DNA of 64,000 nucleotides from Zootoca vivipara. Lineage: Eukaryota. Shown piece after piece: positions 10,707 through 55,352 of this stretch (position 1 is its first letter; every line of letters starts with the position of its first letter). A model generated the notes under the pieces. It was not told the origin of the DNA. It made no database searches and was given only the letters and a program-made list of their open reading frames with translations. The stretch is taken from assembly GCF_963506605.1 (NCBI RefSeq), contig NC_083288.1, forward strand, positions 49,352,001 to 49,416,000, written 5' to 3'. The position numbers and the translations under genes are program-made.

Positions 10707-10842
10707 NNNNNNNNNNNNNNNNNNNNNNNNNNNNNNNNNNNNNNNNNNNNNNNNNNNNNNNNNNNNNNNNNNNNNNNNNNNNNNNNNNNNNNNNNNNNNN
10801 NNNNNNNNNNNNNNNNNNNNNNNNNNNNNNNNNNNNNNNNNN
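10707..10842. other. assembly gap (136 N)
   Basis: Run of N within TAF9 intron 6. Confidence 1.
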
Positions 10843-34749: not shown

Positions 34750-36771
34750 CTAATTCCACCCAGGATTCCTTGGGTAGTAGCTCTTGCAGATGATATCCTT
34801 CAGAGCACCTTCTAGGCTCTTCCTATTCTCAGCCGAGAACAGCTGTCTGCTGCCACCTCTCCGTATGTGCACGCCAAGCACATGCCTTTCATTACAGACC
34901 CACCGGAGTTGAATGGATCTGTTGAGGTGCCAAGTGGCATTGGCAGCCTGGCGCCAGGGGCTGACGCCTCCGCCGGGCCTGAAATGGCCTCGTGAGGACC
35001 TGTTGAGATAGCTGGCCAGGTCTCTGCCAGAGGGATAGGTGGGCAAGTTCAGCTCCTCCGCAACAGCGTTGGAAAGGGCACCTTGCGCAACTGATCTCAT
35101 GGTGGCGTCTGGGCTGGTCAGCAGAAGGAAGATGTGGGTGATCGCGGCAACATCAGCCACATGCCCCATTTCCAGGACCCCATGTCCTCCATACTGCCGG
35201 GGGGCGCGGAGGGTGTCCCGAGCCACCCCGAGCCACCCGTTTGCCATGTTGACAATGACGGCGTCAGCTTCCTTGAGGCATTTCCTCGCGACCGGCGGCC
35301 CTCTCAGGACGGACGAGATTTTGGGCAGCAGGACGGTCTTGAGAGCGTCCATCTTTTGCCCGGGGGCCAAGAGTGAACTGTCAATCTTCCTCACTTCTTC
35401 AATCCACTCTCTAAAGAAGGCCTTGGAGGACGGCTGTTCGGGGAAGCTCAGGAGAACCCCCAGGTACTTGAACGTTTCCCCTCTCCTAAGGCGGGTCATC
35501 GCTTCTCCCTGGATGGCGAACTCGGTTGGCAGGACCTGGCATTGCCGGAGGTGGAGAGACACACACTTGGTGGCGTTGAAGCGCAAGCCCACCCAGCGGG
35601 TGGCCTCAGTGGCAGCGTCCAACGCGTCCTGCAGCTCTTTCCCGCTACGGGCCACGAGCACCAGGTCGTCGACGTAAGCCAGGACGTCGATCTTCCGGCC
35701 GTGCAGAAAAAATCCACCGGATCGAGAGGCGATGTGTCGTACAACCGGCTCCATCGCCAGCTTGAACATGATGTGGCTCAGAGGGCACCCTTGCTTCAGC
35801 CCCTTCCGGATTGGGATTTCCGGGCAATCCAGCTTGGACAGAGTCATGGTGCACCCATTATAAAGATCGCGGACCATGCTCAGGAGCCCTTCGGACATGC
35901 CGAGCTCCGACAGTACGTGGAACATGTACTGGTGAGGGATGGAGCTGAAGGCGCTGGACAGGTCCAGCTTGGCGAGGGCAAACTCCTGGCCCGAACGCCG
36001 GGACTCGTCCAATGCAGCCTGCAAGATGAAGACGCTTCCCATGCCGTAATTCTGCTGCGGGCTGATGGCGCTTCCCTCGATAACCCAGTTGGTGATGCGG
36101 CGGTTGAGACACCGGGCATACATCTTGTAAAGGGTGTTGCACAGGGCAATGGGCCTCCAGCTCTTCAGCTCCTTGGCGTCGCCGCCTTTGAAAACGAGGA
36201 TGGTCTCCACTCTCCTCCACTCGGAGGGAATGCAACGCAGCCGCTTGCATCGGTTGAAAACAGCGGTGAGCACCAGGCAACCGGGGTCTTGCTGATTCAG
36301 AAAGGCGGGCGTCAACTTATCCTTCCCCGCGTTCTTCTTCTTGACGTACCGGAGCATCTCCTTGACCTCTCTCGGGGCGAAGTCTTTCTCGAGGGCGGCG
36401 GATTTGCTCATGGCAGGAAGGCGAGGCCAGCCACGCGGACGCGGGAAATGACCCCAGCCCTCGCTACCGAACACTTCGGAGAAGTGTTTGTGGAGCACCT
36501 TTGCGGGGATCTCGCAAGGAGGAGCGGCCGGCTCGAGGATGTTTCTCAGAGCTTCGCCCTTGTTGACGTCGTACAAGAACTGGATGTTGCTCGCAGCCGC
36601 GGCGTCCTGGTGCTGCGGGGGTCTTCTCCGTCTGCCCTGGGCTGCCCTCCTGCCTTTTGCAGAGAGGTCCTTTGTGAGCTCCTGGACGGCCTCCTCAAAA
36701 TTGGGGGCCCGATGGAGCTCAGAGAGCCATTTCTCTTGCCACTGGGTGGCGGGCGTCGGGAGTGGTGCCAT
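34750..36771 (-). CDS. Utopia/NeSL/R2-type non-LTR reverse transcriptase ORF lacking zinc fingers and RLE endonuclease; candidate domesticated RT gene
   Basis: 673-aa uninterrupted ORF with WRPIAL, KLDLSSAFSSIPH, GLKQGCPLS, AYVDDL, FNATKC and YLGV motifs plus Utopia-like SLLAPGQK and LLTSPD; no CCHC knuckle or PD-(D/E)xK motif. Confidence 0.85.
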   Translation of the reverse strand: MAPLPTPATQWQEKWLSELHRAPNFEEAVQELTKDLSAKGRRAAQGRRRRPPQHQDAAAASNIQFLYDVNKGEALRNILEPAAPPCEIPAKVLHKHFSEVFGSEGWGHFPRPRGWPRLPAMSKSAALEKDFAPREVKEMLRYVKKKNAGKDKLTPAFLNQQDPGCLVLTAVFNRCKRLRCIPSEWRRVETILVFKGGDAKELKSWRPIALCNTLYKMYARCLNRRITNWVIEGSAISPQQNYGMGSVFILQAALDESRRSGQEFALAKLDLSSAFSSIPHQYMFHVLSELGMSEGLLSMVRDLYNGCTMTLSKLDCPEIPIRKGLKQGCPLSHIMFKLAMEPVVRHIASRSGGFFLHGRKIDVLAYVDDLVLVARSGKELQDALDAATEATRWVGLRFNATKCVSLHLRQCQVLPTEFAIQGEAMTRLRRGETFKYLGVLLSFPEQPSSKAFFREWIEEVRKIDSSLLAPGQKMDALKTVLLPKISSVLRGPPVARKCLKEADAVIVNMANGWLGVARDTLRAPRQYGGHGVLEMGHVADVAAITHIFLLLTSPDATMRSVAQGALSNAVAEELNLPTYPSGRDLASYLNRSSRGHFRPGGGVSPWRQAANATWHLNRSIQLRWVCNERHVLGVHIRRGGSRQLFSAENRKSLEGALKDIICKSYYPRNPGWN

Positions 36772-36810
36772 CTCCAGCTGAGATCTCTTGCCACAAAGTT
36801 GGTGTCAATG

Positions 36811-36814
<4 letters not shown>

Positions 36815-36868
<54 letters not shown>
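36815..36868. repeat. (CT)n microsatellite; others (GT)n 5487-5534 and 37930-37972, (AAT)n 12719-12786, (ATT)n 31803-31848
   Basis: Direct inspection. Confidence 0.95.
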
Positions 36869-36870
<2 letters not shown>

Positions 36871-37445
36871 CTTCTTGGTCCTGGGCTTCCTTGAAGGCGA
36901 TGTTGGCAGGTCTTCAAGTCAGTCCGATGTGGGGTGAGGAGGATGGCTTCCGGGTCGGCGCTTTCTGCCCGAGGCGACCTCCTGAAATGAGTCCTGCAGT
37001 GATGCCTGGCCTCCTGGTCTCTCTCTTTCTTGTGAGGGTCTCAGCAGAAGGATCTTCAGTAGTGGAAATCCCCCCACGCAGCCCTCTCTCTGTGCCTCTT
37101 GAGGACCTGTTGAGATCTGTGCCTTGGCGGAAGTGGAGGCTGTTGACAACGGCTGCCCCGTCTGTGGCCCTGCCCCCTCGGTTTCTGAGGAAGTGGGTTT
37201 TCTTCTCTCTTCCACGAATCCTCGTCTCCTACGGAAGATCAGAAAAGCGGGCAGGCCATTAAACCTTTTCACCAAAGCAGCTGGGAGTTCCACAGAGCCC
37301 TCTCTCAAAATCATAACGAGAATTAAGCAAAAGAAAGAAAGAATGAAAAAAAGTTCAGCTGAACACAGTTGCGGCCGAGACCAGCCTCCGGGGGATTAAT
37401 TCCAGAGGGTGGGCACACCATGCTGAGTGCATTTATTGGCTAGGA

Positions 37446-37643
37446 CAGTGTTTTTCAACCACTGTTCCGCGGCACACTAGTGTGCCGCGAGATGTTGCCT
37501 GGTGTGCCGTGGGAGAATTACTTTATATATAGTCAATATAGGCACAGAGTTAATTTTTTTAACATTTTCTAATGGTGGTGTGCCTCGTGATTTTTTTCAT
37601 GAAACAAGTGTGCCTTTGCCCAAAAAAAGGTTGAAAAACACTG
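37446..37643. mobile_element. hAT MITE
   Basis: TIR cagtgtttttcaacc; perfect TSD ggctagga. Confidence 0.9.
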
Positions 37644-37928
37644 GGCTAGGAGACAGAGGGATTTGAATGACTGGTATTAATAATTGCATTATAAACTGGT
37701 ATTGTTATCATGCGGCTGTTATTGGATTTTAATGGAAAACTAATAAAAATTATTACCCCCCCCCAAAAAAAGGAGACAGAGAGATGAACCTTCGCGATGG
37801 GAGGATGTTCCAAAGAATGGGAGAGGCGGAACCCCGCTGGGTGGAAAGGTAGCGAGGAGCAGTGGTTAGAGCACTGGTTTCCCAAATTGGATGGGGGTTT
37901 CCTAGGGGGTGCTAAGAGGCAAGTGGGT

Positions 37929-51555: not shown

Positions 51556-51627
51556 GGCTTGCAAGTTTGTGCTGCTCATTCTGCTCTGCTCTAGGTTGTA
51601 GTAGTTCTTTGAGGATTTTGTTGTATG

Positions 51628-51987
51628 ATGTCTGGCCGTGGAAAGCAGGGCGGCAAAGCTCAGGCTAAGTCTCGCTCGTCCAGGGCGAGTTTGCTGTTTC
51701 CTGTGGGTCGAATGCACCGCCTGCTCCGCAAAGGGCACTATGCGGAGCGCGTGGGAGCCGGTGCCTCTGTCTACACGGCGGCGGTGCTGGAGTACCTGAC
51801 CGTCGAAATCCTGGAGCTGGCCGGCAACGCAGCGCGGGACAACAAGAAGGCGCGCATCGTACCTCGACATCTGCAGCTGGCCATCCGCAACGACCAGGAG
51901 CTGAACAAACTGCTGGCCAAAGTCACCATCGCCCAGGGCGGCGTCCTGCCCAACATGCAGCCGATGCTGCTGCCCAAGAAAGGGTGA
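51628..51987 (+). CDS. H2A: divergent, C-terminally truncated histone H2A (variant or young pseudogene)
   Basis: H2A fold with about 15 substitutions, a 2-aa N-tail deletion and a stop after LLPKKG. Confidence 0.85.
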
Positions 51988-52043
51988 GAGCCACAAACCG
52001 AAGGCCCAGTAAAAAAGCAGGCTGCGGCGTCTGGCCCCCACAA

Positions 52044-52059
52044 GGCTCTTTTCAGAGCC
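52044..52059 (+). terminator. histone 3' stem-loop (H2A)
   Basis: GGCTCTTTTCAGAGCC with HDE AAGAGAGCTG at about 52074. Confidence 0.95.
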
Positions 52060-52865
52060 ATCCACCTTGTCATAAGAGAGCTGAGTTTATATTTCTGAAA
52101 GCTTGACTGGATTTCTGAGAAAGCTATACAGTACTGTGAATTTATAAGCACTGCACTCCGTCATGGGCATAGCCAACCCCCCCCCATCAGTAATGAGGTG
52201 CAGGGGCGAACTGGAGCCTGCCGCGATTTTTTAAAGACTTGTTAGCCCCGCCCCCCAGCTGGCCCTATTGGCCAGCCCTGAGCGCGGCAGGTAAAGGTGG
52301 AGCAGGGGGCCGGACCCGCCCCCTGCTCTCTGCGTAGAGCGGGTCCCGCCCGCAAATTTCCCCCCTCTCTGAAGAGGGATCTAACCAGCAACTGCTGCCA
52401 TCTTAACAAATGCCTGCGCGCGCCCCAAACAAAAATTCCGGCTAAGCCCATGCGCTCGGTCTGCCTTCCTGTTCCCTATTATCCATTTTACCTTCCAAGG
52501 ATCTAGGTGGTGTTTCCACCCCTCGCCCAAAGAACACATGTACGCCCCTATGTTTAAATACAGGCTATTGTAAGGCAGCGGTTCTCAAAGAGCGTTACTT
52601 GTATGGCAAGAGAATGGCAATGTAGCGGGAAGATCGGAGAAACGAACATTTAAACACTTCAGCGCAATATGCATAGTATACCACACATAAAATACTTCTG
52701 GAATATGTAGATTTCCCCAAAATATTTATTATAAAACAAATAGTAAATATTCTGAAAGTGGCCCAATTACCGGTACCTTGAAAACCACTGTCTAAAGTTT
52801 TGGATTAAGTATAGCCATGATAGACAATATGGCAAGTTTACAACTCTTTTCATGAATAGGTAGGC

Positions 52866-52881
52866 GGCCCTTAAAAGGGCC
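52866..52881 (-). terminator. histone 3' stem-loop (H4)
   Basis: GGCCCTTTTAAGGGCC with HDE. Confidence 0.95.
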
Positions 52882-52916
52882 TTTAGCTTGCAAGTTGCAG
52901 CCTTGATATCTAGGAA

Positions 52917-54048
<1,132 letters not shown>

Positions 54049-54096
54049 GGCCTTCCATTGTCAAAGTAGGGGCTTTCCTACGTTCAAAAACCCAAA

Positions 54097-54112
54097 GGCT
54101 CTTTTAAGAGCC
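54097..54112 (+). terminator. histone 3' stem-loop (H3)
   Basis: GGCTCTTTTAAGAGCC. Confidence 0.95.
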
Positions 54113-54616
54113 ACCACATAATCTTAAAAAGCTGGTAATTACGGCAGTATTTTGTCTATTAAGTATTAAGCACCAGTTGCTGGGAATGTGCAGTTTACAG
54201 GAGTCCCACAAGGATCTTGCCGTATGCCCTGCTTCCAACTACCCACACCGTTTACTGCATTACCCTACCGTTTTTTAAAAATATATATTTCAAGGAAGCA
54301 ACCACTTCTCCTCACACACCCCATTGCCACGTGGTGTCTCCCCTTAAAGTTGCAAGAACATTGTCAAGTGACTTGGCACGGATAAAAAAGCCGGGGGGAA
54401 ATTGGCAAAAGGAAAGCAGATTAAAATGAAAGCCTAGAATTGCAGCAATAACGTTACTACCACGTTTGCTAAACGGGGTCCGGTATGGTTTCGAATTGGA
54501 TGAGGCACCGATTTTTTTTTTAAGGGGTTGTACGGTATTCTACGAACTGCGGCACTTGCATCACATGATCCAAAGTACCTCACATGGCAATTCAGCACTT
54601 TCTTGAATTTGTGGGT

Positions 54617-54632
54617 GGCTCTTAAAAGAGCC
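54617..54632 (-). terminator. histone 3' stem-loop (H1)
   Basis: GGCTCTTTTAAGAGCC. Confidence 0.95.
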
Positions 54633-54686
54633 TTTGGGGTTAAAGAGGAGCGCTGCTGCCTCTCGCGCAAGCCGAGCAGGTCCTTC

Positions 54687-55352
54687 CTACTTCTTTTTCG
54701 GCGCCGCCTTCTTGGGCTTGGCGACTTTCGCCTTGGGGGTCTTGGGCTTCGCTTTGGGCTTGGCTGCCTTCGCCTTCGCGGGGCTCTTGGCGGCCTTCTT
54801 GGCTTTGGCCGCCGCCGCCTTGGGCTTCTTGGGGCTCTTGGCGGCCTTCCTGGCGCCTGCCGCGGGCTTCTTGGCCGGCTTCTTGACGCTCTTCTTGGTC
54901 GCGGCTGCCTTCTTCACCTTCTTGGCGGCGCTGGCGGGCTTCTTGGCCGCGGGCTTTTTACCTTTCGCGGAAGCCGCCGCCGGCTTCTTCTTGAGCGCCT
55001 TGTCCTTGTTGTCCGCCTGCTTCTTGTTTAGCTTGAAGGAGCCAGAGGCGCCCGTGCCCTTGGTCTGCAGCAGGATCCCTCGGGTCACCAGGCCCTTCAG
55101 GCCCAGCTTGATGCGGCTGTTGTTCCTCTCCACGTCGTAGCCGGCGGCCGCCAGCGACTTCTTCAGCGCTGCCAGGGACACGCCGCCGCGCTCCTTGGAC
55201 GCCGTCACGGCCTGGGTCAACAGCTCCGTCACGCTGGGGCCCGAGGCCTTGCGGGACTTCGGCGCGGCGGCCGCCGCCTTCTTGGCCTTCTTCGCGGGAG
55301 CCTTGACAGCCGGCAGCGCGGCGACGGGCGCAGCGGGAACCTCTTCAGTCAT
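54687..55352 (-). CDS. H1: linker histone H1 (221 aa)
   Basis: MTEEVPAAP... globular domain (GPSVTELL...[10 protein letters not shown]) and Lys/Ala/Pro-rich tail. Confidence 0.96.

What the first reader, a model, noticed from the sequence alone, without database searches (positions are those of the whole stretch)
34750..36771. Candidate domesticated reverse transcriptase gene derived from a Utopia/R2-type retrotransposon, without endonuclease
Seen: a 2-kb ORF with no stop or frameshift, a strong Kozak context (gagATGg), an in-frame upstream stop and GC/CpG-rich codons, in a window where every other transposon ORF is fragmentary. All three catalytic aspartates are present (KLDL at about 35962; YVDD at 35665-35676). 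The protein follows, in order, the RT, thumb and linker of reptilian Utopia elements as I recall them. It starts after the N-terminal zinc-finger region and stops just before the CCHC knuckle and PD-(D/E)xK nuclease, with no recognisable remnant downstream. Known: Utopia elements target U2 snRNA genes, and I see no U2 sequence or TSD at the flanks. Inference: it cannot retrotranspose autonomously yet has stayed open while diverging, the signature of host co-option. RT-only domestication is rare in vertebrates.
Basis: partly seen in the sequence, partly recalled or inferred. Interest (0 to 1): 0.9.

Follow-up and report, generated by a model that had tools for sequence, protein, structure and literature searches.

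The report
Domesticated retrotransposon reverse transcriptase in lizards
A lizard genome carries one intact gene that encodes only the reverse-transcriptase core of an ancient R2/Utopia-type jumping gene; matching intact genes in other lizards show the host lineage has kept it open, which is rare in vertebrates, but expression was not detected in the little RNA sampled and its job is unknown.

Summary
Window 34750-36771 (-) is an intact 673-aa ORF whose only domain is an R2-clade reverse transcriptase (RT). It keeps all three catalytic aspartates. It starts after the zinc-finger/Myb region and ends before the CCHC knuckle and nuclease.

New evidence supports co-option:
- A Podarcis lilfordi protein (672 aa) is 79% identical, with the same start and stop.
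- Contigs from two further species hold the same locus at single-copy depth with alignable flanks. They show almost no indels in the ORF but many in the flanks.
- An Anolis protein (712 aa) and an unnamed 663-aa protein share the same RT-only architecture. With the lacertid pair they form a 99%-supported clade, sister to turtle elements.
- Substitutions avoid RT-conserved columns (p = 2e-4 within lacertids; 4e-16 against Anolis).
- Neutral simulation predicts about 6 stop codons; none is seen.
- The AlphaFold model is confident (pLDDT 89) and superposes on R2 structures (Z 34-38).

Caveats:
- The protein evolves fast (omega about 0.4-0.5 on 20 sites), and ORF nucleotide divergence is not below that of the flanks.
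- Lacertids carry a 6-7-aa deletion in motif RT2a.
- One RNA-seq run showed zero reads; another gave only a 246-nt contig.
- Synteny in Podarcis and Anolis could not be checked.

Verdict: probably a squamate-wide domesticated RT-only gene of unknown function.

The parts
34750..36771 (-). Intact 673-codon ORF plus TAG stop: the RT-only gene
   Evidence: Pfam RVT_1 6.3e-30; PDB R2 proteins 2.6e-37; AlphaFold pLDDT 89.4, pTM 0.87
36172..36771 (-). Residues 1-200: N-terminal extension (helices equivalent to the R2 spacer/NTE region); no ZF or Myb
   Evidence: A1 alignment; model 16.. aligns from Bombyx R2 residue 260
35455..36171 (-). Residues 201-439: RT fingers/palm (Pfam RVT_1)
36031..36054 (-). 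Residues 240-247: motif RT2a, carrying a lacertid-specific 6-7-residue deletion relative to elements, Anolis and P0159
   Evidence: alignments A1, A2, A3
35959..35970 (-). KLDL, motif A, with catalytic D270
   Evidence: invariant column in 41 sequences
35665..35676 (-). YVDD, motif C, with catalytic D368 and D369
   Evidence: invariant columns
35092..35451 (-). Residues 441-560: thumb
   Evidence: A1; helices in the model; R2 superposition
34780..35091 (-). Residues 561-664: linker-like domain; the protein ends just before the PDQGK/CCHC/RLE part of the elements
   Evidence: A1; model aligned to Bombyx R2 up to residue 881
36805..36807 (-). In-frame upstream TGA, 12 codons before the ATG
   Evidence: read
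36815..36868 (.). (GA)27 microsatellite 44 nt upstream of the ATG; possible promoter-proximal element, function not shown
   Evidence: TRF
36880..37297 (-). Unique 5' flank that aligns in species B and C (candidate promoter/5' UTR; no transcript evidence)
   Evidence: contig pieces, table 8
34373..34749 (-). Unique 3' flank that aligns in B and C, indel-rich; no AATAAA/ATTAAA within 850 nt downstream

Best explanation
This is a host gene derived from an R2-superclade (Utopia/NeSL-like) non-LTR retrotransposon. It retains only the N-terminal extension, fingers/palm, thumb and linker of the element protein. It has lost the N-terminal ZF/Myb DNA-binding module and the C-terminal CCHC knuckle and restriction-like endonuclease. 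It sits as a single-copy, intergenic, intronless ORF about 11 kb upstream of TAF9B and about 15 kb from a histone cluster. Shown: the truncated architecture; orthologous single-copy loci in two related species; an intact equivalent in Podarcis lilfordi; RT-only homologues in Anolis and one other species that form one clade; retention of every family-wide invariant RT residue; a confident R2-like fold. Inferred: the truncation happened once, before the lacertid-Anolis split, and the ORF has since been kept by selection at host level. Inferred mechanism: the protein is still a polymerase. Because it cannot bind or nick a DNA target itself, it would act in trans on RNA templates and extend pre-existing 3'-OH ends, through template-switching or break-primed cDNA synthesis as known for R2 and group II intron-like RTs. 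The fast but constrained evolution suggests a role in genetic conflict (defence against retroelements or viruses) or in the germline. That role is speculation.
For: Intact ORF and RT domain. P0001 from Podarcis lilfordi is 672 aa, 79% identical, with one 1-residue gap and the same first and last residues. In species B and C, contigs bridge the ORF and both flanks at the same depth as the flanks (about 12.5-14.8 in B, about 3.3-5.3 in C). Species C has 0 gap letters over 35134-36802 against 51 in 804 flank bases. Species B has one net 3-nt gap in 35672-36749 against 50 gap letters in 989 flank bases. In neutral simulation, 21% amino-acid divergence needs about 10.9% nucleotide divergence and yields 6.3 stops on average; 0 of 400 runs were stop-free. 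Identity between the window protein and Podarcis is 0.891 at columns conserved in elements and 0.724 at variable columns (Fisher p 2.4e-4). Against Anolis the figures are 0.69 and 0.23 (p 3.6e-16). Of 20 differences to B in codons 587-673, 9 are synonymous, giving omega about 0.4-0.5. Anolis A0A803TJC4 (712 aa) and P0159 (663 aa) share the N and C boundaries. They form a clade with the lacertid pair (SH-aLRT 99), sister to turtle elements (99), with roughly clock-like root-to-tip lengths of 0.84-1.08. D270, D368, D369, K402, Q327 and G328 are invariant across 41 sequences. The model has pLDDT 89.4 and matches R2 structures at Z 33-38, rmsd 3.3-3.9 A over 538-595 residues.
Against: No expression was shown: RNA run X18 gave zero depth over the ORF (about 6% of the run read, tissue unknown), and X16 gave one 246-nt contig at depth 2.2 in a run only guessed to be RNA. 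ORF nucleotide divergence (7.8% to B, about 8.5% to C) is not lower than flank divergence (5.8% and 8.1%), so amino-acid constraint in recent lacertid history is at best moderate; 8 of 22 listed differences involve CpG. The omega estimate rests on 20 sites (p 0.03-0.08). Lacertids have a 6-7-residue deletion in RT2a and changes in other conserved motifs (APG to AG, W471G). No canonical poly(A) signal lies within 850 nt. RefSeq-annotated lacertids yielded no orthologue in the protein searches. Stop codons in B and C could not be excluded outside codons 587-673 because the difference table was truncated.
Confidence: 0.72

Rival explanations
1. It is a host-retained gene, but the protein works without polymerisation. 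It could be an RNA-binding decoy or dominant-negative inhibitor that sequesters the RNA or partners of Utopia/R2-type elements, as truncated transposon proteins often act as repressors.
For: The NTE, thumb and linker parts, which bind element RNA in solved R2 structures, are retained. Evolution is fast, as in arms-race genes. Motif RT2a carries a deletion in lacertids.
Against: All catalytic and family-invariant polymerase residues are kept in four lineages that are only 40-43% identical overall; a pure binder has no need for them. Utopia is described as old and low-copy in Anolis (PMC4640811), so a repressor would have little left to repress.
Confidence: 0.15
2. It is a selfish, endonuclease-less retroelement lineage that persists at very low copy number in squamates. 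It would use free DNA ends or another element's nuclease, and the ORF would be kept by selection on the element rather than on the host.
For: The RT-only proteins form a clade next to active-looking turtle elements. Endonuclease-deficient retroelements exist elsewhere, such as Athena-type Penelope-like elements at telomeres (own knowledge).
Against: The locus is single-copy, with the same flanks in three species separated by about 6-8% nucleotide divergence. There is no second copy in the window, no terminal hallmarks, TSD or U2 target, and branch lengths fit vertical descent.
Confidence: 0.07
3. It is a relic: either never functional, or a formerly domesticated gene now decaying in lacertids, whose frame is still open by chance.
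For: No reads in RNA run X18. ORF divergence is no lower than in the flanks. RT2a deletion. No poly(A) signal.
Against: Six or more stops are expected and none is seen. Frame-breaking indels are absent where the flanks have many. Replacements avoid conserved columns within lacertids (p 2.4e-4). There is an excess of synonymous changes. CpG o/e of 0.73 is retained.
Confidence: 0.06

Closest known systems
Utopia / NeSL / R2 restriction-like-endonuclease (RLE) non-LTR retrotransposons (Kojima and Jurka 2015, PMC4640811; solved R2 structures 8gh6, 8ibw, 9dou, 9nl2, 9nl3)
   Same: Same RT lineage: PDB R2 hits reach 2.6e-37 and structural Z is 33-38. The nearest relatives are turtle elements and proteins from species listed as Utopia hosts, namely Chelonia, Dendroctonus, Ladona and Anolis (PMC4640811).
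   Different: No N-terminal ZF/Myb, no CCHC knuckle, no RLE, no U2 target, a single copy at a conserved locus, and 33-45% identity to any element.
rvt genes: single-copy RT-related cellular genes of fungi, bdelloid rotifers, plants and bacteria (Gladyshev and Arkhipova 2011; own knowledge)
   Same: Stand-alone, single-copy, vertically inherited RT genes without endonuclease that keep the catalytic motifs.
   Different: rvt genes are a separate RT clade that is not derived from RLE LINEs and is not known in vertebrates. No sequence test was run here.
Domesticated group II intron-like RT G2L4 and bacterial defence RTs (DRT2, DRT9, Abi-P2)
   Same: RTs that left their mobile element and serve the host in repair or defence. 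They appear as weaker structural matches (Z 18-20; PMC11761039 for G2L4).
   Different: They are prokaryotic, lack the LINE-type NTE and linker domains, and have an independent origin.
TERT (telomerase catalytic subunit)
   Same: A eukaryotic host RT related to non-LTR RTs that extends a DNA 3' end on an RNA template without a nuclease (own knowledge; Foldseek E 4e-07).
   Different: TERT is ancient and pan-eukaryotic, has TEN/TRBD domains and a dedicated RNA, and shows no close sequence relation here.
LINE-1 ORF2-derived coding exons in vertebrate genes (PMC12129022)
   Same: Co-option of LINE protein sequence in vertebrates; that paper calls such cases few.
   Different: Those are exonised fragments inside host genes, whereas this is a free-standing complete RT core with an intact active site.

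Membership tests
R2/NeSL/Utopia-type RLE non-LTR retrotransposon (as a mobile element) | R2-superclade reverse transcriptase with NTE, thumb and linker | tested here: met
R2/NeSL/Utopia-type RLE non-LTR retrotransposon (as a mobile element) | N-terminal zinc finger(s)/Myb DNA-binding module | tested here: not met
   The ORF starts after it (A1; Bombyx R2 alignment begins at residue 260). tblastn finds no remnant upstream.
R2/NeSL/Utopia-type RLE non-LTR retrotransposon (as a mobile element) | C-terminal CCHC knuckle and PD-(D/E)xK restriction-like endonuclease | tested here: not met
   The ORF ends before the PDQGK block. tblastn finds no remnant downstream.
R2/NeSL/Utopia-type RLE non-LTR retrotransposon (as a mobile element) | Insertion in or next to a specific target (U2 snRNA gene for Utopia), with about 20-bp TSDs in reptiles | tested here: not met
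   No U2 in the window (Rfam). The only 23-nt direct repeat has one copy inside the ORF, so it is not a flanking TSD.
R2/NeSL/Utopia-type RLE non-LTR retrotransposon (as a mobile element) | Multiple copies or evidence of transposition | tested here: not met
   Single-copy depth in species B and C; one copy in the window.
Utopia lineage specifically (ancestry, not current membership) | RT groups with named Utopia families in a phylogeny | not testable with these tools
   No Utopia reference sequences were available. Proxy evidence: the sister clade is made of turtle elements, and the nearest hits come from Utopia host species listed in PMC4640811.
Domesticated (co-opted) transposon-derived host gene | Single-copy orthologues at the same locus in several species | tested here: met
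   Species B and C share both flanks.
Domesticated (co-opted) transposon-derived host gene | ORF kept intact over a time in which neutral sequence would break | tested here: met
   Window, Podarcis, Anolis and P0159 are all intact. Simulation expects 6.3 stops. Indels are depleted in the ORF. Stops in B and C were checked only for codons 587-673.
Domesticated (co-opted) transposon-derived host gene | dN/dS significantly below 1 | tested here: inconclusive
   Omega is about 0.4-0.5 on 20 sites, p 0.03-0.08. Indirect support comes from column-class heterogeneity, p 2.4e-4. No orthologue CDS was available.
Domesticated (co-opted) transposon-derived host gene | Loss of the features needed for autonomous transposition | tested here: met
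Domesticated (co-opted) transposon-derived host gene | Expression as mRNA or protein | tested here: inconclusive
   X18 gave zero reads (6% of one run, tissue unknown). X16 gave one 246-nt contig at depth 2.2, and its RNA status is a guess.
rvt-type RT-related cellular genes | Membership of the rvt RT clade | not tested
   Considered by analogy only. The best sequence and structure matches are R2/LINE, not rvt.

The most novel reading that the evidence does not exclude
A catalytically active, endonuclease-free reverse transcriptase gene arose once from a Utopia-type element in an early squamate and has been inherited vertically in lizards, and perhaps snakes, for well over 100 million years. 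It evolves fast. It serves the host by making cDNA in trans from free 3' ends, for example in defence against retroelements or viruses or in germline DNA-end metabolism. That would make it the first LINE-RT-derived enzyme gene known in vertebrates apart from telomerase.
Probability: 0.35. Interest if true: 0.9.

Novelty: new variant of a known kind. Interest (0 to 1): 0.75.

Why it matters
Host genes derived from transposons are common for gag, integrase and transposase domains, but almost unknown for the reverse transcriptase of LINE-type elements in vertebrates. [quoted passage not shown] A conserved RT-only gene with an intact active site would show that vertebrates other than through telomerase can keep a retrotransposon polymerase for their own use. 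It would give a tractable natural R2-like RT core stripped of its targeting and nicking modules, which is of interest to the R2-based genome-writing field. It would also open the question of which RNA the protein copies in lizards. In addition, the low-copy Anolis 'Utopia' family, whose termini PMC4640811 could not find, may in part be this gene rather than a transposon.

Tried and rejected
The DNA and gene neighbourhood of the Podarcis lilfordi, Anolis and P0159 proteins could therefore not be fetched, and no true dN/dS or synteny test beyond species B and C was possible.
- The read laying difference and indel tables were truncated (334 and 33 rows hidden). Only codons 587-673, plus two other sites, could be classified.
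- The H1 histone search meant to name the species was noisy. It shows only lacertid affinity: 97% Podarcis muralis, 96% Lacerta agilis, 93% Zootoca, over the globular domain.
- The profile search with the four RT-only proteins returned no new orthologue and did not even return P0158 or P0159, so its blank means little.
- The ESM Atlas search gave only generic RT clusters.
- The search of earlier findings held nothing on this locus or on RT genes.
- TSD idea rejected: the 23-nt direct repeat has one copy inside the coding sequence, which stays homologous to the elements beyond it.
- Retrogene idea not supported: the A-run at about 34515-34530 is length-variable in species B and lies 220 nt past the stop.
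- No U2 snRNA in the window.
- No complex prediction was run, because no binding claim is made.
Full report
**1. Observation**

The window holds one ORF at 34750..36771 on the minus strand: 673 aa with an ATG start. No other ORF in the 64 kb exceeds 402 aa, and the longest others are read-throughs over histone genes. The start context is gagATGg, and an in-frame TGA lies 12 codons upstream at 36807-36805.

- The ORF is GC-rich (0.597; GC3 0.746) and keeps CpG (o/e 0.73, reaching 0.82-0.88 in its 5' half). The flanks are at about 0.2-0.5.
- Pfam finds only RVT_1 (6.3e-30, residues 201-439).
- The best solved-structure relatives by sequence are R2 retrotransposon proteins (2.6e-37), then Bombyx R2 and LINE-1 ORF2p.

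**2. What is present and what is missing**

I aligned the ORF with full-length relatives of 975-1160 aa (A1).

- The protein begins just after the C2H2 zinc-finger region of the elements.
- It runs through the N-terminal extension, RT motifs, thumb and linker.
- It stops about 15 residues before the conserved PDQGK block. It therefore lacks the CCHC knuckle and the restriction-like endonuclease.
- tblastn with 37 relatives finds nothing of those parts in either flank, and no second copy in the window.
- Rfam finds no U2 snRNA gene in the window.

An AlphaFold2 model built on a 41-sequence alignment is confident throughout (mean pLDDT 89.4, pTM 0.87). It superposes on R2 structures with Z 33-38 and rmsd 3.3-3.9 A over 538-595 residues. 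Model residues 16-673 cover Bombyx R2 residues 260-881 of 1114. The protein is a complete, foldable R2-type RT core without its DNA-targeting and DNA-cutting modules.

**3. Is it one locus or a repeat family?**

Sequencing runs of the window's own species (coded organism A) hold the stretch. Three other coded species hold 5-7% of its 31-mers.

I laid the contigs of two of them, B (run X14) and C (run X15), on 34000-37700.

- In both, contigs run from the 3' flank into the ORF and from the ORF into the 5' flank.
- Depth in the ORF equals depth in the unique flanks (about 12.5-14.8 in B; about 3.3-5.3 in C). The locus is therefore orthologous and single-copy in both.
- The 144-bp SINE at 34229-34372 is absent from B and C, so it is an insertion on organism A's lineage.

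Substitution divergence:

| Comparison | ORF | Unique flanks |
|---|---|---|
| A vs B | about 7.8% (77/983 and 83/1078) | 5.8% |
| A vs C | about 8.5% | 8.1% |

Gaps behave very differently.

- In C, 35134-36802 has no gap letter, while 804 flank bases carry 51.
- In B, 35672-36749 has one net 3-nt gap, while 989 flank bases carry 50.
- Counting at least 5 flank indel events in C and at least 9 in B, about 10 events would be expected in each ORF stretch. Observed are 0 and 1 (Poisson about 3e-5 and 6e-4; my arithmetic).
- The flanks contain low-complexity runs, so these figures are rough.

**4. Orthologue in Podarcis**

The protein search found one close relative: CAI5791446.1 of Podarcis lilfordi. 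It is 672 aa and 79% identical over the full length. It has a single one-residue gap and the same first and last residues.

I applied the listed B and C differences to the last 87 codons and translated. This shows no stop in either species. B and C share several states with Podarcis that the window has changed, and Podarcis is the most distant of the four.

A histone H1 gene in the window is most similar to lacertid H1s: 97% Podarcis muralis, 96% Lacerta agilis and 93% Zootoca, against 78-89% for other squamates. The window therefore comes from a lacertid-like lizard that is not Podarcis.

**5. Selection within lacertids**

- **Stop codons.** I ran a neutral simulation on the ORF (ts/tv 1.6 (kappa 3.2), sixfold CpG hypermutability). 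It needs about 10.9% nucleotide change to reach the observed 21% amino-acid difference. It produces 6.3 stop codons on average, and none of 400 runs stayed open.
- **Codon positions.** Of the 22 ORF differences listed for B, 12 fall at third codon positions.
- **Synonymous changes.** Of the 20 differences in codons 587-673, 9 are synonymous against an expected share of 24-28%. That gives omega of about 0.4-0.5, with p 0.03-0.08. This is the least conserved part of the protein and a small sample.
- **Where replacements fall.** Window-Podarcis identity is 0.891 at columns at least 80% conserved among 37 element proteins. It is 0.724 at columns under 30% conserved (Fisher p 2.4e-4). Replacements since the lacertid split have thus avoided RT-critical positions.
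- **Against strong constraint.** Overall ORF divergence is not below flank divergence. Eight of the 22 listed differences involve CpG, so a higher mutation rate explains part of this. Even so, the protein clearly evolves fast.

**6. Deep homologues**

The exhaustive HMMER search added two proteins.

| Protein | Source | Length | Identity and coverage |
|---|---|---|---|
| P0158 | Anolis carolinensis, UniProt A0A803TJC4 | 712 aa | 43% over query 3-656 |
| P0159 | unnamed, from a 2303-nt Logan contig | 663 aa | 41% |

Both carry only RVT_1. Both start at the same helix and end within about 10-20 residues of the same point, before PDQGK/CCHC/RLE (A2 and A3).

In a maximum-likelihood tree of 41 proteins the four RT-only proteins form one clade (SH-aLRT 99), sister to turtle elements (99). 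The topology is (P0159,(Anolis,(window,Podarcis))). Root-to-tip lengths are similar, at 0.84-1.08. This fits one ancient truncation followed by vertical descent.

All ten columns that are invariant across the 41 sequences are kept, including D270, D368, D369, K402, Q327 and G328. Identity between the window and Anolis is 0.69 at element-conserved columns and 0.23 at variable ones (p 3.6e-16).

The 6-7-residue deletion in motif RT2a is lacertid-specific. P0159 still has the QKGF...EGCxEH form.

**7. Ancestry**

PMC4640811 describes Utopia elements as carrying one to three N-terminal ZFs, an RT, and a C-terminal ZF plus RLE.

- It lists them in Chrysemys, Chelonia, Pelodiscus, Anolis and Alligator, and in Dendroctonus and Ladona, among others.
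- It notes that in Anolis the termini could not be found because of low copy number and age.
- My nearest relatives come from sea turtles, Gopherus, Dendroctonus, Ladona, Plectus and Centruroides.

A Utopia/NeSL-type origin is therefore likely, but I had no reference sequences to test it. The Anolis 'family' may in part be this gene.

**8. Expression and gene structure**

- RNA-seq run X18 of organism A gave zero depth across the ORF and its unique flanks. About 7.5 million reads, some 6% of the run, were read, and the tissue is unknown.
- Run X16, only guessed to be RNA, gave one 246-nt contig (35674-35919) at depth 2.2.
- No AATAAA or ATTAAA lies within 850 nt downstream.
- TAF9B exons lie at 17.2, 19.1 and 22.1 kb on the same strand.
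- H2A, H3 and H1 genes with their stem-loops lie at 51.6-55.4 kb. The ORF is thus intergenic.

Expression remains unshown.

**9. Interpretation**

The frame has been kept open at one locus in several species. The same truncated architecture occurs in lineages as far apart as lacertids and Anolis, a split of well over 100 My by my own knowledge. The polymerase active site is intact everywhere. The simplest reading is a domesticated RT-only gene of squamates (confidence about 0.7).

The protein has lost both the DNA-binding and the nicking modules, so it cannot perform target-primed reverse transcription on its own. Retention of the catalytic residues argues that it still polymerises, presumably from pre-existing 3' ends or by template switching. 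This mechanism is inferred, not shown.

The rivals are less likely but not excluded:

- a non-catalytic decoy or repressor (0.15);
- a selfish endonuclease-less element (0.07);
- a decaying relic (0.06).

**10. Limits**

- Read laying and the look-up of sequencing runs allow one call each, and the difference tables were truncated.
- No orthologue CDS was available, so there is no whole-gene dN/dS, no synteny check for Podarcis or Anolis, and no full check for stop codons in species B and C.
- Species names of organisms A-D are coded.
- The N run at 10707-10842 was left untouched.

Noticed in passing
window 34987-35009 and 37094-37116: There is a 23-nt direct repeat (22/23 identical; blastn E 1e-5). 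One copy lies inside the ORF (codons about 588-595) and the other 323 nt upstream of the ATG. At the single mismatch (34992), species B and C carry the base that makes the ORF copy identical to the window's upstream copy. It is not a flanking TSD; a templated patch from repair is one guess.
   Followed up: partly
window 34229-34372: A 144-bp SINE-like repeat with very high read and contig depth sits in the 3' flank. Contigs of species B and C skip exactly this stretch, so it is an insertion specific to the window's lineage.
   Followed up: partly
window about 37298-37643: A highly repeated element lies about 530 nt upstream of the ATG. A contig of species C joins 37297 to 37644, so the element may be a lineage-specific insertion close to any promoter of the gene.
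   Followed up: no
window 36815-36868: A perfect (GA)27 microsatellite lies 44 nt upstream of the start codon. Contigs of B and C break there. Some RLE elements target microsatellites, and GA tracts can act in promoters. Neither possibility was tested.
   Followed up: no
window 23894-23967 (-) and 24101-24173 (+): Two tRNA-Gly(GCC) genes with identical Rfam scores sit in divergent orientation 134 bp apart, in the GC-rich stretch just upstream of the TAF9B exons.
   Followed up: no
window 51625-55352: A replication-type histone cluster is present: H2A (51625-51987, +), H3 (about 53638-54048, +) and H1 (54687-55352, -). Each is followed by a histone 3' stem-loop (52039-52083, 54092-54137, 54593-54637).
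   Followed up: partly
window 35863 and 35877: The 246-nt contig of run X16, labelled the same species as the window, carries the bases seen in species B and C at these two sites. This suggests polymorphism or a different population from the reference animal.
   Followed up: no
window 35587-35701: Species B has two alternative 115-nt contigs here (7 and 10 differences; depths 20.7 and 6.8). This could be a heterozygous bubble or a short extra copy, and it spans the YVDD motif.
   Followed up: no
window 13761-13988: There is a weak tblastn match (E 2.8e-5) to an endonuclease/RT LINE protein (P0037). It is a fragment of an unrelated LINE and the only other RT-like trace seen in the window.
   Followed up: no
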